Assembly: GCF_963676685.1 (NCBI RefSeq)
Contig: NC_092351.1
Coordinates: forward strand, 54,126,001 to 54,190,000
DNA from: Mytilus edulis
Lineage: Eukaryota
Direction: 5' to 3'
Length of the DNA: 64,000 nucleotides
A program made the translations under genes and the position numbers. This document shows, piece by piece, positions 2,931-54,690 of this stretch; positions within the stretch are counted from its first letter, which is position 1, and each line of letters begins with the position of its first letter. Under the pieces are notes generated by a model. That model had not been told where the DNA came from and searched no databases. It saw only the letters and a program-made list of their open reading frames with translations.

Positions 2931-2982
2931 TACATTAATATTAGGAGGAGCGTTCGTATTGCTGTCACTCGGATGTATTTAA

Positions 2983-11198: not shown

Positions 11199-13131
11199 TC
11201 ACAACGAGCTCATTAACGAAAGTCTGCCTATCATAGCTGAAAAAAGGAATGCCCGACGAGCAGAGCTATTATCCCCGAATAACTGTGAAGCTATACCAAA
11301 AAGATTGTACGCCCTAGCATATATCAATGGACGTTCTATAAGATAATCTTCTTCGAGAAAAAGATGAAAATCGTGAAGGCAATCGTGCCCTTTTCTGGCA
11401 TTATCAAGATGATAATGACATAGACATTTTAGAAAATAAGCATAAGCTGCAGACGAAATGTGATGCGGTTCATGCCTTACTTCCATTCTTAATTCGTTTG
11501 GTATTAACACAGATCTTTTGATAAATCTCAAATCATCTAACAGCATTATTTTCCTCAATTGAACAATACTTTTCCTCACACTTAATGGCAAGTTGAGCAA
11601 TCTCGACTGAATATCAGACATATCAATGGAGTGCAACAGCTTTTCCCGAGTAAATTTTGATAAAGTATATCTGACAAGGTGTAATGCTTTACTATATTGT
11701 TTCGTCTGATAGAAAAGCGAGGCTAACATCAGCCACCCCGATATAGCGTCATGATAGATATTCTGTAGCAAAGAACAAACACAGGAATTATACAGGTTGT
11801 AATGGTCTTTATTACTACTTTTTGTACTGTTGAATGGTATTAATTGCGCAAAAAGTGAATTCTGAATGGACAAATAATATGCAAATAAATGTTTGTTAAA
11901 AGAATTTTCACAGGAAACAATTTGTTGTATTCCTCTGTACATTTCTTTTTCCACTCCTGAACTTGGTATGATTAAATTTGACATGTATAATAACGGTGAT
12001 TTAAGTGTTTTTTGAACCTCGAAATCGTGAAATACATTTGGTTCAATGTGAGCCATCCTTATTGATACATGAAAGTCAGAGACTTGATTTGAAAATAAAA
12101 TACATCGCCAACCGTATCCATACAGGAAATGCAGTTTTTCTAACACTATTTCACGGGCATGGCCCTCTATTCTATTTTCAAACATATTGTTCTCTGGAAT
12201 GAAGTAATTTAAGCAAATTGAATATTCAACGCAATATACAAGCCTACTCAAACAACGCATAAAACAAGGTATAAGATTTTCAGGTTTCCATACGGATTGT
12301 GGTAGTTCCTTTGATATCCATAACATGATTGTTTTCAAGAAATATGAACAGAGCAAATCTTTGCATTCTTGATAAGTGTCTATAACATCTTTTAAAAGAA
12401 TTTTTAAGAGAGCATAGCATAATAATTGAGTGTGTGTAAAACAATGTATTAACAACTTTTCACTAACTGAAAAAGATATTCGCCATTCTGTATCCTCTTT
12501 TGATGATCCCTTAACTCCAATTGGAACAAAAAGAACTCCATGTTTTTCAATACTTCTTTTTACATCCTTGCTCGGCCAAGAGTTGTTACTTGATCTTCTT
12601 ATCCATTGTTCAGCTGGAGATATCCATGTTTTACAATGTAGGCAATAAGCAAGGTCATACGTACCCTGTTCGTCAGATATACAAGGTCCATGAATTACTT
12701 GACGTTGAACAATAGCTTTAGATATCATATGTTGTTTATATAATGAGCTTGACAAATACTGTATTCCATTATGTTCTTCACAGTTTTTAGAAAAATATTG
12801 GTCATCACTTTTTTCCACTAGCAAATGAGTGAAACCAGGTTTTACATCGTCTGTTCTCATTGACAAATATGTAATATTAGGACTCAATCGCGGTTTTAAA
12901 TATTCATAAACCTCGATGTGTTTTGAAACATACATCATATCTAAATCACTGCCTTTCATGTCAAGTCCTTCCCCGAAACTTCCACTTGTGATTACAGTTT
13001 GAAACTCGCCGCTCGTTGCATTGTCTCTGGCACTATTCATTGTCGTATTGTTTTTACATAATGGTCTGTTCCAACTATATTTTGACACAAATAACGATAC
13101 AGTGCCTTTGATGTGTTTTGCATTGCTGTGT
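11199..13131 (-). CDS. cGAS/Mab-21-like nucleotidyltransferase (cGLR) with C-terminal TPR-like domain, copy 1; 1-nt frameshift near the N-terminus (uninterrupted ORF 13040-11199)
   Basis: Motifs SGSFGEGLDMKGSDLDMM (GS plus DxD), third acid in TYDLAYCL, WRISFSVSEK, SYFLKTIMLW and NYFIPENNMF. Splice acceptor ttgatcag|AC gives an exon start at 13131. The paralog-like N-terminus ALYRYLCQNIVGTDHYVKTIR is in another frame and ends in TGA at 13039-13037. Confidence 0.8.
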
Positions 13132-14720
13132 CTGATCAATAAAGAATTGAAAAAAGTTAATTCAAAAGTAAACACCAATTTAAATAAGTTAAGCGAAAGT
13201 TTCCATCTACTTATTTAAAAGTGTACCGACAATTGGAAACAGAAAAGGTGAACAGTTCTTTGTATTTAAATGTTGGGTTTTCTGATTGCTATTGTCAGAA
13301 TTGTCGTTCTTGTTTGCAGTTTATGTTTTTAAAAGTTATAATTCGTTTAAACTTTCTCTGACTTAAATCACTTGTCAATATATGATCATATCAAGTTGAC
13401 ATCTGAAGGTCTGACTGTTTCGAGTATTGAAGTGTTTGAAACCTAAGTACGGTGATATAAAACATACGTCTACTGTCAAACCTGTTAAGCTTGGAATTCA
13501 AATCTTGAGTTCTATAGTACATCAACTTCATACTATTTAGTTCACTGGAAAGCTTAGAGTGTTTCAATGTATCGCAAAACAGACCGACAATGATAATAGT
13601 TATCACTGTTCTCTTATTAAAATTACAAATACTTTAAGAAATGTATAATTTCCCTAATTATAACGATAACAATGATGTCACTTTCGTTTTTAAAGTAAAC
13701 GTCTTTCCATTCCTGATTTTCAATTCTTATACTTGATGTACTTTTTTGTAAAACAAACCAACAGTAATTAAGACGAAATGCATCTTTTCAAAGACCAGAA
13801 ATGAATCATTTAGAAATGTATTTCTTATAAATATATATAGATAATACCTCCCATTTCTTTTTATCTGTGAGTTCACCTGCACAGTGTTTATAATTTTTTT
13901 TCGTTTCGCTTGAGTACTATAAACAGGTATTTCCATTTCTATTTCCTTTAAACACAACAATACATTACACATAGTATTTAAAGGTTTACTTGAATAAATT
14001 AATACAGTTTGTAAAACCCATAATTGTGAACATTTTCCAAATTAACATACGTGTGTTGTAAACACTGGTTATTGTTATATATGTTATGCAAACCAACAGT
14101 TCATGATTAAGTAATGAATATCTATATTTGTTAAATCCATTCAAAACTAACAGCATTATTCATTCTTATACAGGTTTTTTTACGCTATGTTCTATGTTTT
14201 CTTATAGCTAGTAATTTAAGACTTCTGATGTGTTTCGCATTACTGGCTCTTTAAAACCAAATATTATTTCAGTAAAGTAACCCAATAAAACAAAAGAAGA
14301 GCGGATACATAATATGAATAACACATGAAAAGTATTTCGTTTCAATCTTTAACTTATTATTTAACAGTTCAATTCTTCTATTGAATAATAAAAAAAATAA
14401 CATTCATAAGAAAAAAAAATCTATATTAATCCATGAGGAGAATAAAGCAAATATTAAGTTATATCGGCAAAGAAGTTTTGGTTTAGTTAAATATGTTAAA
14501 TGATTTAAATGTTTAAAACAATGATACTATTTAACGTTAAAGCTATCTCAGATAAAGTTACCTGAGAAGAAATTAGTATATTCATAGTTCAAAACGGCCA
14601 TACAGCAACTCAAGTTTTCAGGTATATATACATGCTTAGATTTTAAACTTTTTTTTAGTATTCCCGATGATGGCAGATTGAAAATATCCGGTAAGACGAA
14701 TGAATTGTTCAAATATTTAT

Positions 14721-16359
14721 ATAACTAGAACGCATTCGCTACAACTGTTGCCTGTTACACCCCAAGGCTATAATAAAAAGTTTGTGATTCGGTACTGACA
14801 TAAGTAAAATATCTTTTCATTAACTCTCCTTTAAAAAACGTAAAAACTCAAAGTTTTCTACTCCCCGAGGCAAAGTTGCTTGTAGATGAATTTAGAAATT
14901 CTTTCTTTATGCATTTTGGTCATATTTCAGTCAATAATGAATCCTTGGCCTTCAAATGTTTAAGTAATACAATTACAAAAATACCAACAATGTGTTCAAT
15001 ACCTACATATAAAATATTATTTCAAATACTGCTAACAAATTTGATGATGTTTCTTTTTCTGATTTTATTCTTATAACCATGTATGACTATTTAAAAAAGC
15101 AACTTCATTGGAAATACCGATCTATTTCAATTAGAGCGTACTTGAATTCGTATAAGACAGAAATTCTGTCAAGAAATAAGTATCTTAAAACAACCGAATA
15201 CAAAAATATTCTAAAAAGGCGAGCAACGGAAGTCATTTTACAGAAAAAAAACCATATCTAGCTTCAAGCTTTTTTTAACTGATTAAATGATTGACAGGCG
15301 TACTCAACGTCTAATTTATGTTAAGCATTGTCAAGAAAATTTTACATGCTAACCATTGCATATGGATCTTCTATAAATTATTGTCTTTCAAGTATTCCGG
15401 GGCAAGTAAATCCTGACACATATGAGCTGATAATGACAATAATGTTTTAGAAATTCATAACATCTATAGGCATAAATGTCGATAGTTGAACAAAGCATTT
15501 CTTGCGGATTATTTCAATTTCAGAAATTGGTAATATATATCACACAAGTCCGTGAATCGACACATTGTTTCAGGAGAATATTTCGATAAAGAATATTCGA
15601 TGATGTGTGACACTTTACTGTATCGTTTTGTCTTATAAAAAATCGAAGCTACCAGAAAGAAAGTCCTGATATAAAGTATATGTTATTCGGGTCTCAGACA
15701 GGGTATATACTGTGACATTCCTGGCTGAGAGCGTATATCTTTTGAATAAATGTTCCGACCTAAATTGCACTTATATTACGGATTACCCCTATCTTAATGT
15801 TTTTTCAGTGCAGGTATTTGTTAAACATTCACAACGCAGCATATATATTTATTATATGTTTATTGTTTCTTAATATTTTGAGTAATCCATTTAAATGCCC
15901 ACTAAATATCCAAACAATTTTTATTCCGTTTAGAAAAAGTTTTCATAAATGTTCAGATATCATGTTTCGTGTGTGTATGTGTGTGTGGCTTTGTTTTAAT
16001 TCGGACAACTCACACCGACACACCAGAAATAATCATAGTTTTCAGATTGTTTGACCTTTAAATTAAACATATATAAAATAGCGGTAAATGATCTTACTAA
16101 TCATGATTTTAATATCTAAATTGTCGATTGGATGGTACAATGTATACGAATATTTGATGAAATGTTCTGTTATAATGCTTCAGTTTTTGTGTTTTTCGGA
16201 ATATGTGTTAACTAACCTGGCGACAATTATCCCCTATATAAAAAGAGAGCTACGGTTATATTACCAATGAGACAACTTTCCACACGAAGTGCATGTCAGC
16301 AATATAGGCTAATGTACGAACTTCAACAATAAAAAAATCCGTACTGTATAGTCTGTTAT
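14721..16359. repeat. Segmental duplication block Y, copy 1
   Basis: Colinear with 33821-35578 starting at ataactag.acgcattcgct; ends at the PLE insertion. Confidence 0.93.
15340..15655 (-). pseudogene. Degenerate cGLR TPR-region fragment
   Basis: LVASIFYKTKRYSKVSHIIEYSLSKYSPETMCRFTDLCDIYYQFLKLK* aligns with LMLASFFYKSKQYSKALHIISYSISKCSPEK of copy 2, followed by deletions and frameshifts. Confidence 0.85.
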
Positions 16360-18258
16360 ATTTTCAATTACAAACGCGTTTTGCAGAATCTCGATATTGA
16401 CGACTTCAAGTCTAAACCTCCTGATTGCACTTGTGCTAGTTCCCAATTCATATATAATCCTGCTGGCCACGTTATTACCGGTGACCTTAACATTGTTAAT
16501 AACACTTCTCTACGAAATGTGTTATCGAAAGGTCCAAAATATCGTGAGCCTAAATTCATCAATTGGAAATACAACTTTAACATTTTGATGGACTCAGTCG
16601 AGGATTATGCCAGGCAATGGGCTAAACGTGAAAAGGAAGTCGTAGACACTCTATCCGAATGGATTAAGGCAGTGAGGTTGTTAATACAAATCAGAATCAA
16701 GAAACTGAATGGGTCCATTAATGCCCATGTTACGTCAATCTTTAAAGACCCAAATGTTGCTAAACACTTATCCGACCTCCATGATAAATATGTTGTTGTC
16801 CCCGCAGACAAAGCCCCAAATAACATCGTTTTTGTCTGTTAAAGTCACTACATTAATTGCTTGATAAACGAATTAGGTATAGACAATTCACTTGGAAACT
16901 CAACATATACCCTCACGACACTTACCAAAGAGGAAATCCTGGATAATCATAGGTCTGTTCTTTGTTCATTTGGTATTTCAACCAAAGATGAAGAACTGGA
17001 TCTTCCATCACTGTATTGGATACCTAAACTACATAAGTGTCCTTACAAACAACGGTATATTGCTGGGTATTCCAAGTGCTCCACGAAACCTGTTTCTAAA
17101 TTATTAACATCTATTTTATCAGCAATCAAAGACGGGCTTCAAAGTTATTGTGAAACTGCCTATTCTAGAGGTGGCGTGAATCAGATGTGGATACTTAAAA
17201 ATTCCAAAGATCTTTTAGAGTACATACAATCTAACTCTCTTTCATCTTGTAACAGTATTAAAACATTTGACTTTTCTACTCTCTACACAAGTATTCCACA
17301 TTCCAAACTAAAAGACAAATTGAAAGAGTTGGTATTACTTTGCTTCATATAAAAGAATGGCCAACGTAGATACAAGTATCTTGTCTTAGGGAGGGATAAA
17401 TCATACTTTGTAAAGAATCACTCTGATTCAAACAAAAAATTCTCTGAAACCGATATTATCAAGATGCTTGATTTCTTGATTGACAACATATTTGTAACGT
17501 TCGGAGGACGTGTTTTTCAACAGACTGTCGGCATCCCAATCGGAACAAACTGTGCCCCTCTACTTGCCGACTTGTTTCTTTATTATTATGAGGCTAACTT
17601 CATGCAGGAACTTCTTAGGAAGAAAGATAAGAAGTTAGCAATATCCTTTAACTCTACTTTCCGCTATATAGATGACGTTCTTTCACTAAACAATTCAAAC
17701 TTTGGTGACTATGTGGAACGCATCTATCCCATCGAATTGGAGATAAAGGATACAACAGATACAGTTAAGTCGGCTTCATATCTTGATTTACATCTAGAAA
17801 TTGACAATGAGGGTCGGTTGAAAACAAAACTTTACGACAAAAGAGATGATTTCAGCTTTCCAATTGTGAACTTTCCATTTCTAAGTAGCAACATTCCAGC
17901 AGCACCTGCATACGGGGTATATATCTCCCAATTGATACGATATTCCCGTGCTTGTATTTCCTATCATGATTTTGTTGATAGAGGGTTACTGCTCATAAAG
18001 GAAGCTATTAAACCAAGAGTTCCAAATATGGTGAAGCAGAAATCATCCCTTCGTAAATTTTACGGACGCCATCACGAGTTGGTTGACCGTTATGGAATAA
18101 CCGTTTCACAAATGATATCGGATATGTTCCTTACGTCGTAACTACAATTCCCTTCCCTTTCATGAATGTGACCTACCGAATTAGACTATTTACCGGATTT
18201 GTAATCACATAAGCAACGCGACGGGTGCCACAAATGGAGCAGGATCTGCTTACCCTTA
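16360..18258 (+). mobile_element. 5'-truncated Penelope-like retroelement (Naiad-like), inactivated RT
   Basis: CxC..GHVITGDL, PADKAPNN, YWIPKLHK, FDFSTLYT, GIPIGTNCAP and RYIDD motifs. In-frame TAA stops at 16840 and 17350. The ORF ends at KFYGRHHELV with no C-terminal GIY-YIG. The 3' UTR is cut at ~18258. Confidence 0.9.
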
Positions 18259-23134: not shown

Positions 23135-25098
23135 TCACAACGAGTTCATTAGTGTTAGTCTCTTTACGGAAGTATTACAACTGTAATCCGGCTCTATTTC
23201 AACTGACTGCATGAATGCTTGTCGGGCAGATTCGTTGTCTCCTAATAACTGAAAAACAATTCCAAGAATAGTGTATTTTTTAGAATGGTATAGTTTTATA
23301 TTTTCTATAAAATAGTTTTCGCTTATAACATTTTGTAAAGAGTGGAGGCAATCCTGACATTGTCTTGCATTATTGAGTTGAAAATGACACACAAACTTTA
23401 GAAAATAACCATACACTATAGAGGAAATACGATATCCTCTATTTTCCACTTCCATTTGTAGTTCGTTTGGTATCAGCCAAGAGTTATGTACAAATTTCAT
23501 ACTACCAATCAGCATTATTTTCCACAACTGTACAATACTGATATTCTGGAATAATTTCAGTTTAAGGGTTTGATAATGAATATCCGACATATCCATGAAA
23601 AATTGTAGTTTTTCGGGAGAACATTTCGATATAGAATATGAGATGATGTGTAATGCCTTACTATACTGTTTAGACTTATAGAAAAACGATGCTAACATCA
23701 GCCATCCAGAAACAGCGTCGTGATAGATATTCTGTAACAGAGTACAAATACATGATTTATACTGCTTGTATTGATGTTTATTACATGTTTTAGTACTATT
23801 CAGTGGAGCAGACTGCGCATATTGTGAACCCAACACTGACATGTAGTTTGTATAGACGTATTTAAGTGAGGAATTGTCACTGAAAACTATCTGGTGTATT
23901 ATTTTTGTGGATGTGTAAGTGTTGCATTTAGTAGAAATAAACACATCATTTGTAAACCATAATAATACGGAATGAAGTGTTTTTACCACCTCGATAGTAT
24001 GCAATGTGTGTGGTTGAATGTGATCCTTCCACATTGATTCATGAAAATTAGATAATTGATTTGAAAATAAGATACATCGCCATCTGTAACTATGCAGGGT
24101 ATACAGTTTCTCCAACAGTATTTCACGAGCACGTCCCTCTATTTTGTTCTCAAACATGTTGTTCTCTGGTATAAAGTAATGTAAGCAAACTGAATAGTCA
24201 ACAGAATATATCAGTCTGCTAAAACATCGCATAAAACAAGGTATAAGATTTTCTGGTTTCCATATTGATTGTGGTAATTCTTCTGATATCCAGAAAATGA
24301 TTGTTTTCAAAAAGTATGAACAGAGCAAATCTTCACATTCGGTGTAGGTTGCTATAACATCTTTCAAAAGAATTTTTAGGAGGGCATAACATATCAATTG
24401 AGTGTGTGTAAAAGTATTAATTAGAAATTTTTCACCAACAGAAAAGGAAATTCGCCATTCTATATCCTCTTTTGGTGATCCCTTAACTCCGATTGGTACA
24501 AAAAGTACTCCGTGTTTTATAATACTTTGTTTGACATTATAACTAGGCCATGAGTTATTTGATCTTGTTATCCATTGTGATGCTTGTGATATCCATGTCT
24601 TACAATGTAAACAAAAGGCAAGGTCAAACTTTCCTTTTTTGTCAGATAAGCATGGTCCATGTATTACAGTGCTATCTGTTTTACGCATGAGCCATTGCTT
24701 ATATAATGCGCTCGGGAAATAATGTTTGCCATTATATTCCTCAAATTCTTGACATAGAAATTGAGAATATACTTGTTCTTGTACTAGTAACTGAGTGAAA
24801 CCAGGTTTTACATCATCTGTTTCCATTAACACATAATTAACATTTGAATTGTTAGCAGCTTTAATGTCTTCATAAACCTCCATGTTTTTAATTACATACA
24901 TAATATCTAAATCACTACCTCTCATCTCAAGTCCTTCACCAAAACTCCCACTTGTGATAACGGTACGATAGGTATCGCTCTTTAATTTATCCCTGGCGGC
25001 ATTCATAAGTCTGAGATTTTTAACATAATTCTCAGATCGCACTATGTAGTGACACATATAACGATACAGTGCTAATGATATAGCTTTTGTTTCTATGT
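23135..25098 (-). CDS. cGLR (Mab-21 NTase plus TPR-like C-terminus), copy 2, large coding exon
   Basis: Uninterrupted ORF with SGSFGEGLEMRGSDLDIM, KFDLAFCL, WRISFSVGEK, SYFLKTIIFW and HYFIPENNMF. TPR-like YTILGIVFQLLGDNESARQAFMQSVEIEPD. Acceptor ttatttcag|ACATAGAA at 25098, so the ORF-track start at 25144 is probably intronic. Confidence 0.92.
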
Positions 25099-25748
25099 CT
25101 GAAATAACATGAAATATATAAATTATGAAGTAATAGGGATACATAGATCTACTATAATAAAATTGAAATTTAGCTTCAGTGAGTTGTTAAGATGACAATT
25201 TTTCATAACAACAGACGAAGAGATTTTGAAATGACTTTGTTGATTGTAATAAAATAATTGATGTCTACCATTTCAAATGTGATAGTCATACTCAACATCT
25301 CCATTTGCTCATATGTCGAAGATAAACTGAAAACACACGCACAAAAAAAATGTCCTTTTTAAACTAGTAATCGAAAACAGTTTGAATATTTCTTAGTTAA
25401 TTGTATGTCTTAATTTTCTAACCTTCCATTTCCTTTTGTCTGTTAATCTTTGATATGATTTGGTCGGGATAAATTATTTATGTAATTTTTTTTTCAGGAA
25501 TAAAAAAACACAACATTTCATTGTCCTGGTTATAATTCATAATTTAGAAAATACAGATTAGTATTTATAATATTTCAGTATCATAGTTTGATATGTATGG
25601 CTTTTTTGTTCCTTTAATTGGAGATCTAGTTTTTAAACAAATACTTCTTCTTTTAAAATTTTCCTTCCCTCCTCCCTCCCCTTAATAAAATGAGTTTGCC
25701 CCATTGTTGTTTTTATTGCTGTATGTAAGATATTTATATATTATTTAG

Positions 25749-26092
25749 GAACATTATTTTTCAACTACATTATATAACCAAGACAAATTCACTGATATGG
25801 ATTTTGTAGTTCATGGACCATGTATATCTTACACAGAAGGAACGTATGACCATGCCATATGCTTACATTGTCCAACATGGGTATCAAAAGCATCACAATG
25901 GAAAACAAGATTAAATAACTCATGGCCAAGTTATAACTATAACAAATTATTATAAAACATGGGGTACGTTTTGCACGAATCGGAGTTAAGGGATCTCCAA
26001 AAGAATGGCGATTTTTTTTTCTGTTGGTGAGAAGCTATTATAAGACACAACACAGATCGTATTCCTGAAATTTTTGACATTGTTATTTTTAA
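25749..26092 (+). pseudogene. cGLR NTase-core fragment, + orientation (duplicate of 1677-2027)
   Basis: Same VVHGPCISYTEGTYDHAICLHC...NNSWPSYNY segment inside the duplicated block, antisense to copy 2. Confidence 0.9.
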
Positions 26093-26369
26093 CCCATGTC
26101 GTTATTTTAAAATAATCACATCTTTCTGTTACGATTTGAATAGATACCTATAGTCAGATATTTATACCATCTTATAATCAATCATATGATCGATTCACAA
26201 TGAATATTTGTGATACTAATTAAATTGTAAAATTCGACAAAAGCTGACTGGGTAATAAAACTGTCGTTTTAGGGAGTAACATTTGTTCTCGATTGCAAAT
26301 GCACACTGTTTATACCATAAAGTGATCTTGGTTTCAAACATTTGACTGATCTGCCCTGATCATATTCAT

Positions 26370-26672
26370 TATAAAATTGAAAATGGAAATGGGGAATGTG
26401 TCAAAGAGACAACAACCCGACCACAGAAAAAACAACAGCAGAAGGTTACCAACAGGTCTTCAATGTAGCGAGAAATTCCCGCACCCGGAGGCGTCCTTCT
26501 ATAGCTGGCCCCTAAACAAATATATACTAGTTCAGTGACAATGAACGCCATACTAACTTCCAAATTGTACACAAGAAACTAAAATTAAAATAATACAAAA
26601 CTAACAAAGGCAAGAGGCTCCTGACTTGGGACAGGCGTAAAAATGCGGCGGGGTTAAACATGTTTATGAGAT
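26370..26672 (-). mobile_element. Short SINE-like retroposon specific to block X copy 2
   Basis: Absent at ~2295-2310. Carries the ttaaccccgccgc..cctgtcccaagtcaggagcc core and a gttgtctctttgacacattccccat tail. Confidence 0.75.
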
Positions 26673-28643: not shown

Positions 28644-29389
28644 TTCAATACCGAATTCATGTTCATGCAATGCTTAATTTTGAAGGTAACCTCTTAACTA
28701 CGGTAAGCATTTTGTTGTCCATATAGCTATACCGAGCATTAGAGAGGTAAAACAAAATGTGTCAAATACGATATCTTTCTATGTTGAAATTAACATAAAA
28801 CATCGCAAGAGAGTATACCTTTGATTCTTACTAGAAAAATAAGAATGAGTGTACTTAGAAGTTGACCCTTAAAGCACATTCAAAGGGCAATTATTTTATT
28901 TGAAAATGCTTTCTCGAAACCAACCTTTTTTCAGTTATACAGTTAACAGACTATGTATATATGTATTTTAGTACGCTCTTCTTTTGTTTTAAAATTCAAA
29001 AAGAAAGTTTTCGAAATTTAAAAGTGTCATCAAAATATATTTACTCTGAATATTAACGTGTACACATAAAATTAATGATCATATATAAATAAAGACATTC
29101 TTAGACAATTATGTAAACGTTATGTTGTATACAAGTTTATCATTTAAGGATCATACAGAATTAACAACATCAGTATATAACATACCTGTCATCGTAGTTG
29201 ATCTGTTACCGTTAACGTGGCAATCTGTGTTCTCGTTTCTAACTGTAATTGTTTGCTATTTTATTTAAATATCAAAATACCACCTACACATTACTTATGG
29301 CTGTATGTCAATCATACTTTTTCATTGGATAAGTTTATCATGTATCCATATTGTTATAAGTAGTAGTCAAAGGTTAAACCATAATTTAG

Positions 29390-29500
29390 CAATAGACGGA
29401 AATAGAAAGAAGGTTGAGGTACAATAGAGGGAAATAGAAAGAAGGTTGAGGTACAATATAGAGGGAAATAGAAAGAAGGTTGAGGTACAATAGACGGAAA
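29390..29500. repeat. Nascent minisatellite, 3 x ~32 bp
   Basis: ggaaatagaaagaaggttgaggtacaata occurs three times here and once at 4975-5018. Confidence 0.9.
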
Positions 29501-31200: not shown

Positions 31201-31242
31201 AGTTTTCAATTTCCTTTCAACAGGAAATTTTCACTTTCACTT
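31201..31242 (-). promoter_or_regulatory. ISRE/IRF-E plus kB-like cluster
   Basis: Minus strand reads AAGTGAAAGTGAAAA and GGAAATTGAAAACT (GAAANNGAAA), with GGAAATTTTC between them on the plus strand. Conserved at 6586-6627 and 57989-58030. Confidence 0.6.
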
Positions 31243-33820: not shown

Positions 33821-35578
33821 ATAACTAGCACGCATTCGCTAAAACTGGTGCCTGTTACACGCAAAGGCTATAATAAAAAGTTTGTGAATCGGTACTGACA
33901 TAAGTAAAATATCTGTTCATTAACTCTCCTTTTAAAAACGTAAAAACTGAAAGTTTTCTACTACCTGAGGTAAAGTTACTTGTAGATGAATTTAGAAATT
34001 CTTTCTTTATGCCTTTTGGTCATATTTCAGTTAATATTGAATCCTTGGCCTTCAAATGTATAAGTAATACAATTACAAAAGTACTGACAATGTGTTCAAT
34101 ATCTACGTATAAAATATTAATTCAAATACAGCTAACAAATTTGATGATGTTTCTTTTTCTGATTTTATTCTTTTTACCATGTATGACTATTTTGAAAGCA
34201 ACTTCATTGGAAACGCCAATCTATTTCAATTACAGCGAACTTGAATTGCTAGAAAAAAAACAATATCTTATTATACAGAAATCCTGTCATGAAATACGTA
34301 TGGCATCTTAAAACAAGGAGTTCAACTGAATAGCAATATATTATTAAAAGGCGAGTAATGAAAATCATTTTACAGAAAAAAAAACATATCTAGCTTCAAG
34401 CTTTTTTTAACTGACTAAATGATTGACAAGCGTACTCAATGTCGTCTTATTGATGTAAAGCATTGACAATTAGATTTTACGTGCTAACCATTGCATATGG
34501 ATCTTTTATAAATTATTGTCTTTCAAGTATTGAAGGGCAAGTAAATACTGACACATATGAGCTGATAATAACAATTATCGTTTAGAAACTCATTAAATCT
34601 ATAAGCCTAAATGTCGATAGTTGAACAAAGCATTTCTAGTGGATTATTTCAATTTTAGAAATAGGTAATATATATCAGACAAGTCCATGAATCGACACAT
34701 TGTTTCAGGTGAATATTTCGATAAAGAATATTCGATGATGTGTGACACTTTACTGTATCGTTTTGTCTGATAGAAAAACCAAGCTACCAGAAAGAACATC
34801 ATGTCATTCAGGTCTCAGACAGGGTATTTACTGTGGCATTCTTGGCTGAGAGCTTATATCTTTTTAATAAATGTTCCGACCTGAATTACACTTATATTAC
34901 GGACTACCCCTGTCTTAATGTTTTTTTCAGCGGAGGTATTTGTTAAACATTCACAAAGCAGCATATATATTTATTACATGTTTAATGTTTCTTTATATTT
35001 GAGTAATCCATTTAAATGCCCATTAAATATCCGAACATTTTTCGTTTAGAAAAAGTTTTCAATCAAGTTTCAGATATCATGTTTTGTGTTTTTATGTGTG
35101 TGTGGCTTTGTTTTAAATCGGACAACTCACACCGACACACCAGAAATAATCATAGTTTTCAGATTTTTTTACTTTTAAATTAACCATATATAAAATAGCG
35201 GTAAATGTTATAACTATTTTTCTTATCTAAATTTTCGATCGGAAGGTATAAAGTAAAAACACAAAAATACTGAACTCCGAGGAAAATTCAAAAAGGAAAA
35301 TAAAAAATCAAAAGGCAAAATCAAAAGTCCCAACACATCAAACGAATGGATAACAACTGTCATATACGAATGTTTGATGAAATGTCCTGTTATAATGCTT
35401 CAGTTTTAGTGATTTTCGAAATCGTTGTTAACTAACCTGGCGACAATTATCTCCTATATAAAAAAGAGCTATGGTTAGATTACCTATGATACAACTTTCT
35501 ACACGAAGTGCATGTGACTAATATGGGCTAACGTACGGACTTCAACAATGAAAAATCCATACTGTACAGTCAGTTATA
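33821..35578. repeat. Segmental duplication block Y, copy 2
   Basis: Colinear with 14721-16359. Confidence 0.93.
34475..34792 (-). pseudogene. Degenerate cGLR TPR-region fragment (duplicate of 15340-15655)
   Basis: Near-identical nucleotide sequence inside duplicated block Y'. Confidence 0.85.
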
Positions 35579-41824: not shown

Positions 41825-43316
41825 TCACAACGAACTCATTTACAACAGTCGCCTTACAGAATTGTTACGTATTCGATCTGGACACATGCATTCCAAGTGA
41901 CAGAATGAATTCTTGTCGGGCGTTATACCAAAACTAATGTAGGCTTTTTTATTAGTTATGAGTGGTTATGAACTACCTGTCAGTTAACTGCAAGTACTCT
42001 CAGATATTTACCTAGTGCCTTTATGTTGTTCGGATGTACAAGTATCCGGCCACATCCACTGTGCTTTTGTCCATCTGATGAGTTAAGTGTTTTTCAACTG
42101 ATTTTTATAGTTCGTGCTTATGTTGTACTGTTATATGTACCTGTTCCAAGTCAGGAGTCTGTAATTCAGTGGTTGGCATTTGTTTATAGTTACCTTTTTT
42201 TGTTTTTCGTTCTTTTTTTATATTTGTTAGTTTCTGTGTCATTTTGGTCTCTTGTGGATACTTGTCTCATTGGCAATCATACCACATCTATTTTTATAAT
42301 TGAATGCTACCGCTGAATCTTTAATAAAATGATAGTCTGCAATTTTGGAGGCACTCTTGACATTGACAGTCACATAGTCCATCATTACTCAAATAAGAAT
42401 AACAAAGAAAGTTAAGACAATAAGCATAAACTAAAGGCTCAAAGTGATGATTTAGAATGATTATATCTATTTCCACTTGCAGTTCATATGGTATTAACTC
42501 AGAGTTACTGTGAAACATGTGAAATATGATATCATCTGTAAGCAATATTTTCCATGATTGAACAATACTTTTTTTTAAAGATTTAAAGAAAAATTTCAAT
42601 TTAAGCAATTGGTGTTGAATGCACGACACATCCATGACATAGAGAAGTTTTTCGGGAGTACATTTTGATATAGAATACTCGATGATGGTTGATGCTGTTT
42701 CTTGTTGTTTTATCTTATAGTAAAACGATGCTAACATTAACCACCCAGAAATAGCGTCATGTTGAATATTCTGTAGCAGAGTACACAGACAAGAAATATA
42801 TTGTTTGTATTGGTGTCTATAACTACTTTTAGTACTGTTTAGTTGAACAGACTGCGCATATTGTCCAGACCACAATGACAAGAAGTACGTGTACAAGTAT
42901 TTTAGTGAGGATTGATGAAAGGAAACTTTCTGATGTAAACCTCTAATTGTTCGCAAAAGAATCCCAATCAAAAGCATCATTTGTCAAACATGATAACAAT
43001 GAATTAAGTGCGTTTGAAACCTTCATAGAATGCAATGTATGTGCTTCAATTTCAACCATCCACGTTGATACATAAAAGTTAGAAAATTGATTAGAAAATC
43101 AGGTACATCGCTTTTCATTACAATGCAGGTTATAAAGTTTCTCTAACAGTTTTTCACGAGCGCGTCCCTCTATTTTGTTCTCAAACATGTTGTTTTCTGG
43201 TATGAAGTAATGTAAACAAGCTGAATAGTGAACGGAATATATCAGTCTGCTTAAACATTACATGAAACAATGTAAAAGGTTTTCAGGTATCCATATTGAT
43301 TGTGGTAGTTCTTCTG
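41825..43316 (-). pseudogene. cGLR pseudogene, 3' half only
   Basis: Starts abruptly at SEELPQSIWIPENL (43316) and contains stops and frameshifts. The 219-aa ORF carries LLQNIQHDAISGWLMLASFYYK. A short repeat is inserted at ~41925-42300. The paralog-like stop region is at 41825-41920. Confidence 0.9.
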
Positions 43317-43319
43317 GGG

Positions 43320-45790
43320 AGGGCATACCGTATTAATTGAGGGTGTGTATAAGTATTTATGAGATATTTGTTCATTTTAAATGTCTGAACGTACAAAGCA
43401 GCTACTTTTGCCTATTCTCCAGGACCAAACATATCGTGTTTCTGCATTACAGAATAGGACAAACTCTATAATATTCCGTGGCTGGTATGAAGGTTGTGTG
43501 CTTCATTAGGGGTCCTGACCATTTCTTTCATGTTGTATTAAGCTTTGACTACTGATATATATAGTCAGTATTTCTTTTAAGCGGAGATATCTACTATATG
43601 CAACCATTGGTGGTTTTGGAAATAGCTCCCTAAGAAGTCATTTATAATGTTTTCGCAAGGCTTTATTTATATTAATCCTAACGAAAAATGATATTTAGTT
43701 ACAAATACTAGTGATATTTGATTGTCAGATTCTTATATAAAGCAGAGTAACTCTGACCGTTCGATTTTGAGAGCCGAATCACAGTTACGATGTATTTCAT
43801 GCTCCTTATATCCCCGTTGCTTAAGATGGCCTTCGAATTTACAAATTGTATCTTTGAAATTCTGTGTGCTGATGTTGTTTCGGTGGTGGTAAATTCAGAG
43901 AAGTCTGTTTGCTTATGCTTATGCATAGATGTCCTATCGAAATATTCATATGTATTAGAAGGTTTGATATAGCTCTTTATATCAAGGATACCAGTGCTCC
44001 TGAACCTCATCCCTTTATGTACGACTGTATCGAGAAAAATAGATTACACTAGTAATTTTGGGGCCCATTATAGCTTGTTGTTCGGTGTGAACCAAGGCTC
44101 CGTGTTGAAGGCCGTACATTGACTTATAATGGTTTACTTTTTCAGATTGTTATTTGGATGGAGAGTTGTCTCATTGGCACTCACACCACATCTTCCTATA
44201 TCTATCTTCGTTTGATATTTCCTAAGTAAACTTTAATTAAGGGTGATGATCATTTGCTTTTTAAAAAAAAATCCTCAACTTCTTTTCGTGTTGAAGGAGC
44301 TATTATAAACGCATCATCTCTATACCTACCGTAAAATAAGATCTTATTTTTATACTTAAATTTTTCAATAATTTTATTGATAAATTCGAATGTTCGAATA
44401 TCACAAATCTCTGGGCTGTATTTTACTGCACTACTATAAGCCCGTCTTACAGATTGAATAATGCATAGAACTCCATGTTAGTTTACATGCTGGTGCTGTC
44501 AAAAAAGATTAAAATGCAATCCCGATCAGGTCTTAAATATATCCCTTGAATAGCTAGTTTAGGAAGGAGTCTTAATCTGGGTCTCTCTTTCAATGAGCCT
44601 CGAAGAAAATCAAGAGTTATTCCATCAATCTCACCATTGTCAAACATCCTGCTGATTTGTGTTTGGATATCATTTCTAATCAGTAATAGATAAGGTTATT
44701 GTATCTGGGACAATATCCCTAATGGACCTAGGCTTTGAGATGAGGAACACAGATTTATGACTCTCATTAAAAGATTAGTCCGCCATACAATTGTTGAAGC
44801 TGTGATTTAAAAAATGACATAAATGAACTTGGACTGGTGTTTTTAGAGCTGATGTGATGTGAAAAAAAGTATACAAAAATAAACCTAATCAAATAATTAC
44901 GAAGGACATATTTTTAAAGATTTGTATAGTCAGAATTTGTGGTTAATTCCTGAGGAGAGTGACATTTATAACTATCTCTGGGGGTTGGACACTTGACGGG
45001 TAAACAAATCACACTTGAAAGATTTTTATTCTGCCTATAACATGTATAAAAATCATTAAAAATATGTCCTTCGTAATTATTTAGCGTCACACATGTGCAA
45101 GTGGCTCAGCTTCAATATCAGCCATTATACATATCCAAGTTTACGATCTGGCCTTAGCAACAGAAGAAAACGTTAACATTACTGCCTATGGAGAATTCAG
45201 TAGGCATATTGCACCATCTTCATGTAATGGATAGGCTTTCACTGCCTTAAACTTTCTTTAATGTAGTGTGTCTTTTAAGCTATTACAATTGCGCCTCCTT
45301 TATCGAAAATATTCAGGCATGTTTCTCAAAGATTGTAATCCTAGCTGTTGTTTTTAGTGAAATTGTAGTAGTTATTTCGTAAATCAAGTATAGCTAATTC
45401 AAACTTTGTTAGATCTAGATAATTTTCAAGTTCGAATCAAGCAAGTGTTGGTTCATAAGATGATTTCTGTCGGAACGGATGCATTCCCCGACTTTCTGTA
45501 TTGCCAAAATGAAAACCACATCGCAGTTTTGTGGCAAATTCATTAAAGTCTGTCACTATATGTATGCCTATGTTACACTTCTTAGGCATAGGTATAACTT
45601 TCAAACCTCTACCTAGAACTATGTATTGTTCGTCTGTCAATTGACAAGTGGCTAAGTTATATACATATTGTTGAGTGCTATTATTTCTCTTTTCTTTCTA
45701 GAAACCCGACTGAGTTATCTTGCTTTTTGTGTAACAGTTTTTTCTTTCTTTTTAAATCTGCGAGCCCTTTATATTGACTTTTATTCTGAT
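43320..45790 (-). mobile_element. Degenerate Penelope-like retroelement of a second lineage
   Basis: Minus-strand pieces in the expected order: LTDEQYIVLGRGLKVIPMP..DFNEFATKLRC (45640), SPEICDI..FYGRYRDDAF (~44320), HP*LKFT*EIS, FLDTVVHKG..LDIKSYIKPSN (~44000) and LFPKPPMVAYSR (~43610). Many stops and frameshifts. Confidence 0.82.
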
Positions 45791-47756: not shown

Positions 47757-49735
47757 TCACACTAAGTTCATTAGTAACATTCTATTTACAGACGTGTTGT
47801 ATCTTTGATCCGGATCTATTTTCACTGACCGCATAAATGCTTGTCGGGCGGATTCATTGTCTCCTAATAACTGAAAAACAATCCCAAGAACAGTGTAAGC
47901 TTTATATTGAAAATTTTTATCATTTTCAATAAAATATCTTTCTTCTATAACAAGTTGTAAAGTATGTATGCAATCCTGACATTGTCTGACATTATTGAGA
48001 TGATAATGACATAAAAACATTAGAAAATAGGCATAAACTATAGAGGAAATGATAAAGGGTCTATCCTCTACTTCCATTTGTAGCTCATATGGTATTAAAC
48101 GTGAATTTTCCTTAAATATTATAAAATCTACAAGTATTATTTTCCACATCTGTACCATACATTTTCTTTGAAATACTAACAAATCGTTCAATCGGACATG
48201 AGTATCCGACATAGTCATGAAGCGGTTTATTTTTTCGGGAGTACACTTGGCTATAGAATACAATATTATGTGTAAAGCGTTATTATATTGTTTTGTCTTA
48301 TAGAAAAACGAAGCTAACATCAGCCATCCAGATACAGCGTCATGATAAATATTCTGTAACAGAGTACAAAGACAGGAATTATACTGTTTGTATTGGTGTT
48401 TATTACAACTTCTAGTACTGTTCAGTGGAACAGACTGCGCACATTGTCCACACACCAATGATAAGTAGTAAGTATATAAGTATTTAAGTGAAGATTGGTC
48501 ACAGGAAATAATCTGGTACAGTCCTCTTTTGAAATTATAAGTGTCCACTTTTGAATCAATAGGCACAATATTTGCCAAACATAATAATTTTGAATTTAGT
48601 GTTTTTGCAACCTTAATAGTATGCAGTGAATTAGGTTCAATCTGAACAATCCACGTTGATACACTAAAGTTAGATACTTGATCTGAAAATAAGATGCATC
48701 TCCATCCGTATCTATACAGGATATAAAGTTTCTCTAACAGTATTTCACGAACACCTCCCTCTATTTTGTTCTCAAACATATTGTTTTCTGGAATGAAGCA
48801 ATGTAAGCAAATTGAATACTGAACACAATAAATAAGCCTGCTAACACATCGCATAAAACAAGGTATAAGATTTTCTGGCTTCCATATTGATTGAGGTAAT
48901 TCTTCTGATATCCAAAACATAATTGTTTTAGAGAAATAAGAACAAAGTAAATCTTCACAATCGGTGTAGGTTGCTATCACATCTTTCAAAAGAATTTTTA
49001 GGAGAGCATAACATATCAATTGAGTGTGTGTAAAAGTATTTATTAGAATTTTTTCACCAACAGAAAAAGAAATTCGCCATTCTATATTCTCTTTTGGTGA
49101 TCCTTTAACTCCGATTGGTACAAAAAGCACTCCTTGGTTTATAATACGTTGTTTGACATTATAACCAGGCCATGAGTTATTTGATCTTGTTATCCATTTT
49201 GATGCTTGAGATGTCCATTGCTTACAATGTAAGCAAAGGACTTGGTCCATAAATCCGTCTTTGTCAGATATACTTGGTCCATGGATTTTTGAACCATAAA
49301 TATTCATTGTATTATCAAGGAAACCTTGTTTGCATAATGTGCTCGAAAGATAAAATGTTCCATTAAGTTTTTCACAGAACTGTAGTAAACTTTCAAATTG
49401 ATTACCAGTAAGTTCCACCACCATCTGAGTAAAACAAGGTTTAAGGTCGTCTGTTTCCGTTCTCAAATATATAAGATTTGGATTGAGTCGAGGTTTTATT
49501 CTATCTGTATCAACCTCAATAAATTTTGCTACATCCATTATATCTAAATCACTCCCTCTCATCTCAAGCCCTTCACCAAAACTTCCACTTGTGATAGTGG
49601 TATAATGGTTGTTGTTTGTCATAACATCCCTGACAGTATTCATCAGTCTTAGTGTTTTAACATGATTTTCTGTTCCAACTATGTTAAAACACATAAAACG
49701 ATACAGAGCTATTGATATGGTTTTTGTTTCCATGT
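47757..49735 (-). CDS. cGLR (Mab-21 NTase plus TPR-like C-terminus), copy 3, large coding exon
   Basis: Uninterrupted ORF with SGSFGEGLEMRGSDLDIM, FMDQVLCL and WRISFSVGEK. Acceptor ttatttcag|AC ATG GAA, with ATG at 49733. The 3' flank is homologous to that of copy 2. Confidence 0.92.
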
Positions 49736-49994
49736 CTGAAATAAACAAGCTATTACTTAATCGATTTATCATAAAAAATACAATATAATATAAAAATTTA
49801 CCTACATTTTCTCCTTTTAATGAATTTGTTAAGATAATGTCCTTAATATTTCATCGTCTGTTTTACATTAGTTAAATATTTGCCCTTGAGGTAAACGGTC
49901 AATGATGTGGAAAGATCAGTTTCAATGTATGTGATATTGAAACACGATAGCAAAAAAATATAGATTATCGTTGATCATCTTAACAAGATTGATT

Positions 49995-53300: not shown

Positions 53301-54543
53301 AAAATTATATTTAACTTTAATTTAACACTAATGTCATACGAGCAAGAAACAAACAAATCGATATAATAAATCTAAATTAACTAATGTTAAAGCACAGAGC
53401 TTGATATATTTTGTGGAAGTTATAACTGTTTAAACAATACATCCTGTCCTGCTTCGTCTGATTTGTATCGTTTTTTTAAATCTTGGTTCAGTTTGACTGT
53501 AGTCAATTTGATCTTTAATTGTTTTCCTGATTCACTAACACACATGATTATTGTGATTAGCTCAAATTCTTTTTTTGTATTCCTATTTATTTTCTCATTC
53601 AAGGCCATTTTTACAAGGTAATCAGTTGTTGATGTTTCTACTTAATTGGCCTACATGCAACAGCGAACACACGTTTAAGCATGAACGTGATTAAATCTCA
53701 TTTCAGAATTGATACGAGTAAATCGGTAATATATGTAAGAATCATTGGCGCTGTTCAATATAAATGAACCATGCTTAAAAAGTCAAATGAACCACTTTTA
53801 CTTGGCTCTTTGAAGTACATCACAATTGTGATACTTGATATAATGTAATCGAGGATGTGATTTAAGTTGAAAATGAACGGAATGTAAGTATAATATTTGT
53901 CCTTTTGATTCGTCGTCAGATTACGAGATATATAGACGATACATCGACTTGAACAGAGATTTTGTTAATTTTAGTGCACAGTCTTGAATTTTTATTGACT
54001 GAACTGAAAACACACATTTTTGCAAAAGTTGTTGTCTTCCAAATGTCCGTTACCCAGATTCACAGAATGAAGTTTCACATCATGTTTTGATGTATCTGTC
54101 TTTAAAATTGGCACAAAACTTTCTTTAATTGTGAAAAGTAAAATGCAAAACTGTATATTTATCTAAGTAAGAGAAATATGTATTCAGAACTTGTGATAAT
54201 TTTTCAGGTGTAATTCACACAAACCAAATAGAAAGAATATTTCTCAACCAAAAACATAAAATTATTCCTCAATCAATTGCTCATTTTTATAACCGACGAT
54301 TCAGAATCGGATGCATGTTTTACATCAAGTCAAAAGGAGTTAAGTGAAATATTCTCATCTCCCCCCTCGTTTCATACAACAATAGCATTTTTGTATATTC
54401 CACTTAACACAAAGGATATAGTTTTAATATTGTATTTTTACAATCGGATCTAAAAAAAAACATTTAAACTGTTTAATCGAAATACATTTACTTGAAATAT
54501 GTTTGACAGTCTTTTAAAAGTTGTTAAACTGAATTCACAAATA

Positions 54544-54690
54544 TCACAACAAGTTCATAAGAGTCATTCTCTTTGCAAAAGAATTAAATCTATGATCCGG
54601 TGATACTTCAATTGACTGCATGAATGCTTGTCGGGCGGATTCGTTGTCTCCTGATACATTTAAACCAATACCAATAATGTTATATATCAA
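54544..54690 (-). pseudogene. cGLR C-terminal remnant (last ~48 codons)
   Basis: Translates as LIYNIIGIGLNVSGDNESARQAFMQSIEVSPDHRFNSFAKRMTLMNLL*, matching the paralog C-termini. The rest of the gene is absent and no acceptor is visible upstream. Confidence 0.9.

What the first reader, a model, noticed from the sequence alone, without database searches (positions are those of the whole stretch)
11199..54690. Tandem array of cGAS-like receptors fused to TPR-like domains: candidate innate immune sensor locus
Seen: three ~650-aa paralogs keep the GS loop, DxD and third catalytic acid, plus cGAS-like SYFxKT and (Y/C)FIPENNMF motifs. These are followed by ~300 helical residues with TPR-like segments (GWLMLASFFYKxKQYxKAL; YTxLGIVFQLLGDNESARQAF..IxPD). 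At least six fragments of further copies are interleaved. Established: cGLRs make cyclic dinucleotides that signal through STING and are expanded in bivalves, while TPR arrays bind ligands including RNA ends in IFITs. Inference: the TPR module is a sensing or autoinhibitory domain controlling the cyclase, and this subfamily is a rapidly turning-over receptor repertoire. I cannot tell whether this clade has been characterised.
Basis: partly seen in the sequence, partly recalled or inferred. Interest (0 to 1): 0.85.

Follow-up and report, generated by a model that had tools for sequence, protein, structure and literature searches.

The report
Mussel cGAS-like receptor genes with TPR tails
This stretch of the blue mussel genome holds a tandem row of cGAS-like immune-sensor enzyme genes carrying a helical TPR-like tail: a real and very large gene family, but one whose architecture was already catalogued in 2023 and whose biochemistry is still untested.

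Summary
The window is Mytilus edulis chromosome DNA. It carries three head-to-tail minus-strand ORFs of 659-671 aa, 56-68% identical, plus six fragment loci.

- **NTase half:** Each ORF has Mab-21 NTase and Mab-21_C domains above Pfam cut-offs. GS, DxD and the third Asp are invariant across 41 paralogs. The fold is cGAS-like (Foldseek E 1.9e-8), but the cGAS zinc thumb is absent.
- **C-terminal half:** Residues 400-669 model confidently (pLDDT 90.6). Every top structural match is a TPR protein, and the domain profile hits consensus TPR at E 3e-7.
- **Which copies are intact:** Copies 2 and 3 are complete, annotated genes with an upstream block, a 57-nt ATG mini-exon and a main exon. Copy 1 has a 1-bp deletion that stops the ancestral frame, no mini-exon, and a 10-aa deletion in its last repeat.
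- **Scale:** The array is part of a ~1.15 Mb cluster. The genome holds at least 66 full-length loci, many with stops.
- **Constraint:** It is strong on the C-terminal catalytic lobe (pN/pS 0.29) and near neutral in the segment before the TPR (1.16).

Li et al. 2023 already list cGLR-TPR fusions and count 218 cGLRs in M. galloprovincialis. The scan also noted this family elsewhere in this genome (s1-837642).

The parts
23135..25098 (-). Copy 2, main coding exon (stop codon included). It encodes all but the first 2 1/3 codons. Equals RefSeq XP_071126633.1 (P0001).
   Evidence: ORF. Splice acceptor ttatttcag|AC at 25100-25099. 99.7% identical to P0001 from ORF residue 14. Pfam Mab-21 30.9 bits and Mab-21_C 53.5 bits. 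cGAS-like fold.
29186..29242 (-). Copy 2, 57-nt mini-exon ending ATG ACA G|GTATGT. It supplies Met-Thr and the first base of Asp.
   Evidence: Pattern match. Alignment with the copy-3 and left-hand equivalents gives 92% mean column identity, with ttacag acceptor and GTATGT donor conserved. It matches the MTD... start of P0001.
31220..31240 (-). Conserved upstream element GTGAAAGTGAAAATTTCCTGT (ISRE/IRF-like GAAANNGAAA plus a TTCC..GGAA palindrome), about 2 kb 5' of the copy-2 mini-exon. Candidate promoter cassette.
   Evidence: Three copies in the window against 0 expected by chance. It sits in a block conserved between the copy-2 and copy-3 upstream regions. A regulatory role is inference only.
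47757..49735 (-). Copy 3, main coding exon (stop codon included). Equals a RefSeq M. edulis 'uncharacterized protein' (P0011, 661 aa).
   Evidence: ORF. 99.7% identical to P0011 from ORF residue 11. Pfam Mab-21 35.1 bits, Mab-21_C 51.3 bits, and TPR_8 26.0 bits against a cut-off of 25.7.
54752..54808 (-). Copy 3, ATG mini-exon (ATGACAG|GTATGT).
58008..58028 (-). Copy 3, the same conserved upstream element (GTGAAAGTGAAGACTTCCTGT).
11199..13178 (-). Copy 1: a long ORF with the catalytic motifs, but damaged. It has an N-terminal frameshift, no mini-exon or upstream block, and a 10-aa deletion in the last TPR. If translated at all, probably from Met47 (13040).
   Evidence: ORF. Two tblastn pieces in different frames overlap at 13043-13055. 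A 1-bp gap relative to copies 2 and 3 puts TGA in the ancestral frame. No ATGACNGGTR lies between 13178 and 23135. The M. galloprovincialis relative P0056 is 95% identical from residue 47.
42315..43369 (-). Pseudogene covering residues ~239-613, with stops and frameshifts.
   Evidence: tblastn gives three pieces with 3 stops in all. blastn shows 73-75% identity to copies 2 and 3.
25749..26065 (+). Antisense fragment (residues 140-254) inside the intron upstream of the copy-2 main exon. It is part of duplicated block 25635-31414.
1677..2014 (+). The same antisense fragment in the left-hand duplicate block (1557-6810, 89-94% identical to 25635-31414). That block also carries a mini-exon (4770-4826) and the upstream element (6605-6625). 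They probably serve the frameshifted copy that lies left of the window.
15512..15670 (-). Fragment (residues 478-530) inside repeat block 14714-16360.
34647..34796 (-). Fragment (residues 481-530) inside repeat block 33814-35578, which is 87% identical to 14714-16360.
54547..54684 (-). C-terminal fragment (residues 624-669), just 3' of the copy-3 mini-exon.

Best explanation
Copies 2 and 3 are complete genes of a Mytilus-specific clade of cGAS-like receptors (cGLRs). Each protein has a bilobed Mab-21/cGAS-type nucleotidyltransferase with a full catalytic triad and no zinc thumb. A variable helical segment follows, and then a TPR-like alpha-solenoid that is found only behind this NTase. The most likely mechanism is inferred, not shown. 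A cytosolic ligand or partner protein engages the variable surfaces (NTase residues ~105-180, the segment 376-434, and parts of the TPR). The NTase then makes a cyclic di- or oligonucleotide signal, which is read by one of the mussel's STING proteins. The locus grows and decays by tandem and segmental duplication. Copy 1 and the fragments are casualties of that process.
For: - **Identity:** P0001 is 100% identical to copy 2 and is named Mytilus edulis.
- **Domains:** Mab-21 scores 28-35 bits and Mab-21_C 51-59 bits, both above the 24.1-bit cut-off.
- **Sequence matches to solved structures:** For the single sequence, mouse cGAS scores E 8.6e-12, cGLR1 8gjy 3.6e-11 and MB21D2 5.7e-9, while MAB21L1 reaches only 0.38. 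For the family profile, 8gjy scores E 3.2e-19, and D174 aligns to the Asp of its VDLTL strand.
- **Fold:** The full model has pLDDT 76.7 and pTM 0.72. The top 50 Foldseek matches are all cGAS; the best has E 1.9e-8 and TM 0.65 on the target.
- **Active site:** S65, G66, S67, D78, D80 and D174 are invariant in 41 paralogs.
- **Purifying selection on the catalytic C-lobe:** pN/pS is 0.29 for residues 195-375 and 0.09-0.2 for Mab21_C in pairwise comparisons.
- **TPR:** The domain model has pLDDT 90.6 and pTM 0.87. All top Foldseek and VIA-align matches are TPR proteins, at Z 9-11.8. The domain profile hits consensus TPR at E 3e-7.
- **Immune context:** A paralog carries an N-terminal TIR domain (P0035). 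STING ligand-binding-domain exons are present in the genome.
- **Family dynamics:**
Against: - No product, ligand or expression was tested.
- The NTase half has pI 5.5-8.6. Most values lie below the >8.5 that Li et al. 2023 report for nucleic-acid-sensing cGLRs, so a dsDNA or dsRNA ligand is not favoured and the ligand class is open.
- The TPR fold matches lie below the Z of about 13 that the tool gives as the level where helical repeats become specific. Only the last repeat reaches sequence-level significance.
- Omega>1 is not significant in any segment.
- Unequal dS between domains of the same pair suggests gene conversion, which blurs any selection estimate.
Confidence: 0.7

Rival explanations
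1. The TPR tail is not the sensor. It would be an output or assembly module, recruiting downstream partners or driving oligomerisation. Ligand recognition would lie in the NTase surface and the variable pre-TPR segment.
For: The first TPR helices (residues 465-510) are among the most conserved parts of the protein (pN/pS 0.25; low entropy), as expected for a shared partner. The most variable stretches are 376-434 and 105-180, outside the canonical repeats. The closest structural matches (KLC, LGN, Rap, p67phox, HOP, SRP72) are peptide- or protein-binding TPRs.
Against: Later TPR parts (511-669) are only moderately constrained (pN/pS 0.54), and 600-629 is variable in the all-pairs window scan (pN/pS 1.34; 0.84 with four independent pairs). 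No partner is known. Nothing here separates input from output.
Confidence: 0.3
2. These proteins signal without making a nucleotide. They would act as Mab-21-type scaffolds, as MAB21L1 appears to, or as reported for shrimp Mab21 proteins that activate IKK-epsilon (abstract of PMC12928593).
For: No activity has been measured. The Pfam NTase match is weak and covers only the C-terminal part of the model. The NTase pI is not basic.
Against: GS, DxD and the third Asp are invariant across 41 paralogs that are otherwise 46-88% identical. cGAS and cGLR1 match far better than MAB21L1 (E 1e-11 to 1e-19 against 0.38 and 5.8e-6). The cGAS nucleotide-pocket motif CSY(H/F)(V/L)KT is kept.
Confidence: 0.1
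3. The enzyme makes a different product class, such as linear 2'-5' oligoadenylate (OAS-like), read by something other than STING.
For: The GS-x10-DxD spacing and the absent zinc thumb fit many NTases. There are weak hits to PF01909 and PF22600.
Against: No OAS structure is among the top sequence or fold matches; all are cGAS, cGLR or MB21D2. STING is present in the genome.
Confidence: 0.1
4. Copy 1 is a transcribed or untranscribed pseudogene, not a third functional receptor.
For: A 1-bp deletion puts TGA in the ancestral frame. There is no ATG mini-exon or conserved upstream block. It has a 10-aa deletion in the last TPR. It is not among the M. edulis RefSeq proteins recovered in the top 120 hits.
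Against: A 613-aa frame from Met47 stays open with all catalytic residues. An M. galloprovincialis protein (P0056, named cGAS-like receptor 2) is 95% identical from that residue, so the truncated form may persist in both species. Pairwise dN/dS against copies 2 and 3 is 0.35-0.42, though that mostly reflects older history.
Confidence: 0.55

Closest known systems
Animal cGAS-like receptors (cGLRs) with appended TPR repeats, as catalogued by Li et al. 2023 (PMC9980059, Fig. 1C and S2A)
   Same: A Mab-21/cGAS NTase with a complete active site is fused to TPR repeats. The family is greatly expanded in bivalves. That paper counts 218 cGLRs and 9 STINGs in M. galloprovincialis and 119 cGLRs in M. 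coruscus.
   Different: That work lists the architecture only. I found no Mytilus protein in its table of tested enzymes, as far as the stored supplements show, and no later paper on a cGLR-TPR in the searchable library. M. edulis copies, their gene structure and their constraint map are not described there.
Mammalian cGAS (e.g. 6cta, 4k8v)
   Same: Same bilobed fold (Foldseek E 1.9e-8). Same GS / DxD / Asp triad. Same CSY.(V/L)KT and HYFIP..N(L/M)F motifs.
   Different: There is no zinc thumb: cGAS has about 12 extra residues (..KTCCESSGAKCC..) where the mussel proteins have none. There is no basic N-terminal tail. The NTase pI is near neutral. An extra ~300-residue variable segment plus TPR follows. 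Identity over the structural alignment is only 16-20%.
cGAS-like receptor 1, PDB 8gjy
   Same: It is the best profile match (E 3.2e-19). The alignment runs from the third catalytic Asp to the C-terminal HYFI..NLFE motif.
   Different: It is a single-domain protein of 376 residues with no TPR tail. I did not determine its species or ligand from the tools.
Peptide-binding TPR domains (kinesin light chain, LGN/Pins, Rap, HOP, SRP72)
   Same: A stack of antiparallel helix pairs. Z 9-11.8 over 150-200 residues. The last repeat matches consensus TPR by sequence.
   Different: Identity is 5-19%. A non-TPR insert with short strands sits at domain residues ~108-175, which is protein residues ~507-574. 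The scores are in the range the tool warns is common for helical repeats.

Membership tests
cGLR / Mab-21 (cGAS-type CD-NTase) family | Mab-21 NTase and Mab-21_C domains above the Pfam gathering score | tested here: met
   All three copies: PF03281 at 28.3-35.1 bits and PF20266 at 51.3-59 bits, against a cut-off of 24.1.
cGLR / Mab-21 (cGAS-type CD-NTase) family | Bilobed cGAS-like fold | tested here: met
   Model pLDDT 76.7. The top 50 Foldseek PDB matches are all cGAS; the best has E 1.9e-8 and TM 0.65 normalised to the target.
cGLR / Mab-21 (cGAS-type CD-NTase) family | Complete active site: G[GS] loop, [DE]x[DE], third acidic residue | tested here: met
   G66-S67, D78-x-D80 and D174 are invariant in 41 paralogs. 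D174 aligns with the catalytic-strand Asp of cGLR1 8gjy.
cGLR / Mab-21 (cGAS-type CD-NTase) family | Ligand-dependent synthesis of a nucleotide second messenger | not testable with these tools
   Needs recombinant protein and TLC or LC-MS.
cGLR / Mab-21 (cGAS-type CD-NTase) family | A STING-type receptor in the same genome | tested here: met
   PF15009 exon-level matches above the cut-off at five places on C3 and C8. The functional link to these cGLRs is not tested.
cGAS proper (vertebrate dsDNA sensor) | Zinc thumb H-x5-CC-x6-C between the lobes | tested here: not met
   The HMMER alignments place a gap in the mussel protein opposite the cGAS ..KTCCESSGAKCC.. segment.
cGAS proper (vertebrate dsDNA sensor) | Strongly basic nucleic-acid-binding surface (pI > 8.5 in Li et al. 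2023) | tested here: inconclusive
   The NTase half has pI 5.5-8.6 in 16 paralogs; copy 2 is 7.5 and copy 3 is 6.6. Whole-domain pI is only a proxy for surface charge.
Tetratricopeptide repeat (TPR) | 34-residue repeat recognised by sequence profiles | tested here: met
   The last repeat only. Copy 3 scores 26.0 bits for TPR_8 against 25.7. Copies 1 and 2 fall below the cut-offs. The family profile hits consensus TPR 8bu0 at E 3e-7, and also SPINDLY, CDC27 and BBS4.
Tetratricopeptide repeat (TPR) | Right-handed solenoid of antiparallel helix pairs | tested here: met
   The domain model has pLDDT 90.6. All top Foldseek matches (E >= 1.9e-3) and nearly all of the top 50 VIA-align matches (Z 9.0-11.8) are TPR proteins or designs. 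The Z values lie below the tool's specificity level for helical repeats.
   No IFIT entry is among the 50 best rows of either structural search. This does not exclude RNA binding.

The most novel reading that the evidence does not exclude
The hundreds of Mytilus cGLR-TPR paralogs form a diversified receptor repertoire. In it, the hypervariable helical segment (residues ~376-434) together with the lineage-specific TPR solenoid recognises non-nucleic-acid ligands, such as pathogen proteins or peptides. That would couple NLR-like specific recognition to cyclic-nucleotide signalling in an animal. The near-neutral NTase pI, the peptide-binding character of the closest TPR folds and the concentration of amino-acid change just before the TPR all allow this reading. 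None of them demonstrates it.
Probability: 0.15. Interest if true: 0.8.

Novelty: new member of a known kind. Interest (0 to 1): 0.38.

Why it matters
cGLRs are a major class of animal pattern-recognition receptors, yet the activating ligand is known for only a few of them. Bivalves hold the largest repertoires, and TPR-fused cGLRs are a catalogued but untested architecture. This locus offers two complete, annotated, single-main-exon genes (copies 2 and 3) that are easy to clone. It also offers a constraint map that says where to cut domains and where recognition surfaces may lie. The value is as a well-described entry point for experiment, not as a new kind of system.

Tried and rejected
- **Expression:** Expression and splice junctions are therefore untested. 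The exon structure rests on the RefSeq protein start, conserved splice signals and paralog conservation.
- **Foldseek on the C-terminal domain:** No match reached E <= 1e-3. I rely on the uniform TPR identity of the hits, the VIA-align list and the sequence profile.
- **Positive selection:** Windowed NG86 counts gave pN/pS of 1.96 for residues 390-419 using all pairs. With four independent pairs it is 1.60 at P = 0.06, and the window was picked after looking. I do not claim positive selection.
- **IFIT analogy:** No specific support.
- **Li et al. domain table (supplement 2):** It is truncated in the stored copy before the TPR rows. I could not check which accessions they call cGLR-TPR.
- **Range of the C-terminal domain:** Ten distant representatives (26-38% identical) were looked up. 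Nine are Mytilus proteins and one has no name. The Atlas search gave only mollusc clusters at useful scores. The weaker 326 of the 476 hits were not listed, so presence in other bivalves is not excluded.
- **Model coordinates and PAE:** Not available, so I could not test whether the TPR covers the active site, which is the autoinhibition idea.
Full report
**What is in the window.** The window has about 31% G+C. It comes from Mytilus edulis: the protein of the second ORF is 100% identical to RefSeq XP_071126633.1 on a 90.6 Mb contig, and the genome search places the window at C8:54126001-54190000. Three long ORFs lie head to tail on the minus strand. They are copy 1 (11199-13178), copy 2 (23135-25144) and copy 3 (47757-49772). 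Their pairwise identity is 56-68%. tblastn with these proteins finds six further loci:
- 1677-2014(+)
- 15512-15670(-)
- 25749-26065(+)
- 34647-34796(-)
- 42315-43369(-), which has stops and frameshifts
- 54547-54684(-)

**The N-terminal half is a cGAS-type nucleotidyltransferase.** All three copies pass the Pfam cut-offs for Mab-21 (28-35 bits) and Mab-21_C (51-59 bits) against a cut-off of 24.1.
- **Single-sequence matches to solved structures:** mouse cGAS scores E 8.6e-12, cGLR1 8gjy 3.6e-11 and MB21D2 5.7e-9. MAB21L1 reaches only 0.38.
- **Profile matches:** a profile of 41 paralogs improves 8gjy to E 3.2e-19. It aligns D174 with the Asp of the catalytic strand.
- **Fold:** an AlphaFold2 model of copy 2 (pLDDT 76.7, pTM 0.72) gives only cGAS structures in the Foldseek top 50. 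The best has E 1.9e-8 and TM 0.65 on the target.
- **Active site:** G66-S67, D78, D80 and D174 are invariant in 41 paralogs that otherwise share 46-88% identity with copy 2.
- **Zinc thumb:** the cGAS zinc thumb is absent. The alignments put a gap opposite the cGAS ..KTCCESSGAKCC.. segment.

These are therefore cGLRs, not cGAS orthologues.

**The C-terminal half is TPR-like.** Residues 400-669 were modelled alone with 36 sequences and gave pLDDT 90.6 and pTM 0.87. Foldseek finds nothing at E <= 1e-3. Its best rows are all TPR proteins: Rap, MamA, KLC1, Ctr9, designed CTPRs, LGN and OGT. VIA-align against 48,161 chains gives Z 9.0-11.8, and nearly every one of the top 50 is a TPR protein or design. 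The tool warns that helical repeats reach such Z values easily. The fold class is therefore supported, and nothing more specific. By sequence, only the last repeat is recognisable. Copy 3 scores 26.0 bits for TPR_8 against a cut-off of 25.7. The domain profile hits consensus TPR 8bu0 at E 3e-7, and also SPINDLY, CDC27 and BBS4. A non-TPR insert with short strands interrupts the solenoid. No IFIT structure is among the best matches.

**Where the C-terminal domain occurs.** A full HMMER scan of 1.84 billion representatives finds 476 clusters at E <= 1e-3, and the match always reaches the C-terminus of the hit. The longer hits I checked carry Mab-21 domains in front of it. Of ten distant representatives looked up, nine are Mytilus proteins (M. 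edulis, M. galloprovincialis, M. trossulus, M. coruscus, M. californianus) and one has no name. The ESM Atlas returns only mollusc clusters at useful scores. As far as I could see, this tail is a mussel-lineage invention tied to this NTase. Some paralogs add a further N-terminal domain. P0035 has a TIR domain, with TIR_2 at 29.9 bits against a 28-bit cut-off. P0043 has a C2H2 finger. The TIR fusion supports an immune-signalling setting.

**Gene structure.**
- **Start of the copy-2 protein:** RefSeq begins it as MTD..., not with the ORF's own ATG.
- **Acceptor:** the main exon has a clean acceptor, ttatttcag|AC, at 25100-25099.
- **Mini-exon:** the pattern ATGACAG|GTA occurs three times, at 4767-4776, 29183-29192 and 54749-54758, all on the minus strand. 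Each lies in a 57-nt mini-exon with a ttacag acceptor and a GTATGT donor. The mini-exon is more conserved between the copy-2 and copy-3 units than the coding sequence is.
- **Upstream block:** about 1.8-3.3 kb further upstream, each unit has a conserved block that contains GTGRAAGTGAARAYTTCCTGT. It occurs three times against 0 expected by chance. Its GAAANNGAAA core resembles an IRF/ISRE site. Another first-stage note (s1-839004) pointed me to it. I confirm the conservation but not the function.

Copies 2 and 3 therefore have complete units of about 8 and 10 kb. Copy 3 equals RefSeq protein P0011.

**Copy 1 is damaged.**
- A 1-bp deletion relative to copies 2 and 3 puts TGA in the ancestral frame after about 32 codons (the frame change is also visible).
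- No mini-exon or upstream block lies between it and copy 2.
- Ten residues of the last repeat are missing.
- A frame from Met47 stays open. An M. galloprovincialis protein is 95% identical from that point, so a truncated product cannot be excluded.

I rate copy 1 as more likely a pseudogene than not.

**Family size and turnover.** The genome search scored 66 full-length single-frame matches out of 1178 first-look candidates. Twenty-two loci lie on C8 between 53.06 and 54.21 Mb, and nine of these have stops or are truncated. Thirty-six lie on C13 between 1.1 and 4.6 Mb. The copy just left of the window is frameshifted at residue ~199. A degraded copy lies just to the right. Inside the window, several blocks are duplicated:
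- 1557-6810 and 25635-31414 are 89-94% identical.
- 14714-16360 and 33814-35578 are 87% identical.
- 4728-7264 matches 54710-58933 at 70-80%.

So four of the six fragments are two pairs carried by duplicated blocks, not independent decay events. Copy 2's closest relatives (80-88% identical) lie 50-430 kb away, and its window neighbours are more distant. The array is old and has been overprinted by larger duplications.

**Constraint.** NG86 estimates on 16 paralogs give overall dN/dS of 0.35-0.76. The values by segment, using four independent pairs, are:

| Residues | Region | pN/pS |
|---|---|---|
| 195-375 | C-terminal catalytic lobe | 0.29 |
| 465-510 | first TPR helices | 0.25 |
| 105-180 | NTase surface | 0.95 |
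| 376-434 | helical segment before the TPR | 1.16 |
| 511-669 | rest of the TPR | 0.54 |

The contrast between 376-434 and the catalytic lobe is strong (Fisher P 5.6e-7). Omega>1 is not significant; the best window, 390-419, gives 1.60 at P = 0.06 and was chosen after looking. Synonymous divergence differs between domains of the same pair, which suggests gene conversion. The NTase half has pI 5.5-8.6. Most values lie below the >8.5 that Li et al. 2023 report for nucleic-acid-sensing cGLRs.

**What is known.** Li et al. 2023 (PMC9980059) surveyed 3,020 cGLRs. They state that 87% have no appended domain and that some carry tetratricopeptide or ankyrin repeats (their Fig. 1C and S2A). Their species table lists 218 cGLRs and 9 STINGs for M. 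galloprovincialis. The architecture and the bivalve expansion are therefore published. In the searchable library I found no paper that characterises a cGLR-TPR or any Mytilus cGLR. STING ligand-binding-domain exons are present in this genome.

**Verdict.** The family assignment is well supported. The sensing or autoinhibitory role of the TPR remains a hypothesis, and the sequence data point at least as much to the variable segment in front of the TPR. These are new members of a known kind. They are of moderate interest as a clean experimental entry point into an untested branch of cGLR biology.

Noticed in passing
window 59918-61207 (+) and 16381-18141 (+): A 429-aa reverse-transcriptase-like ORF (weak RVT_1 hit, YIDD motif), and a degraded copy split over three ORFs that is 69% identical at DNA level. 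These are retrotransposon remnants between the cGLR units.
   Followed up: partly
window 6605-6625, 31220-31240, 58008-58028 (all -): A conserved 21-nt element, GTGRAAGTGAARAYTTCCTGT, with an IRF/ISRE-like core. It lies 1.8-3.3 kb upstream of each ATG mini-exon and is absent upstream of copy 1. It is the subject of another first-stage note.
   Followed up: partly
window 25749-26065 (+) and 1677-2014 (+): An antisense piece of the NTase core (residues 140-254) sits in the intron of copy 2. It also sits in the equivalent intron of the left-hand unit, so it predates that duplication. If transcribed with the gene, it could pair with the sense exon. Not tested.
   Followed up: partly
P0035 (M. edulis, another chromosome) and P0043 (M. 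trossulus): Paralogs with an extra N-terminal domain in front of the Mab-21 and TPR modules: TIR in P0035, and a C2H2 zinc finger in P0043.
   Followed up: partly
copy 2 residues 162-181 (window about 24602-24661, -): H162-G-P-C165 and C178-L-H180-C181 are invariant or nearly so across 41 paralogs, and they flank the catalytic D174.
   Followed up: no
L014 2999-5004 (C8:54116999-54119004) and L015 2921-4818: The copy immediately left of the window is frameshifted at residue ~199. The copy immediately right is heavily degraded. The next intact copy starts at C8:54199867.
   Followed up: yes
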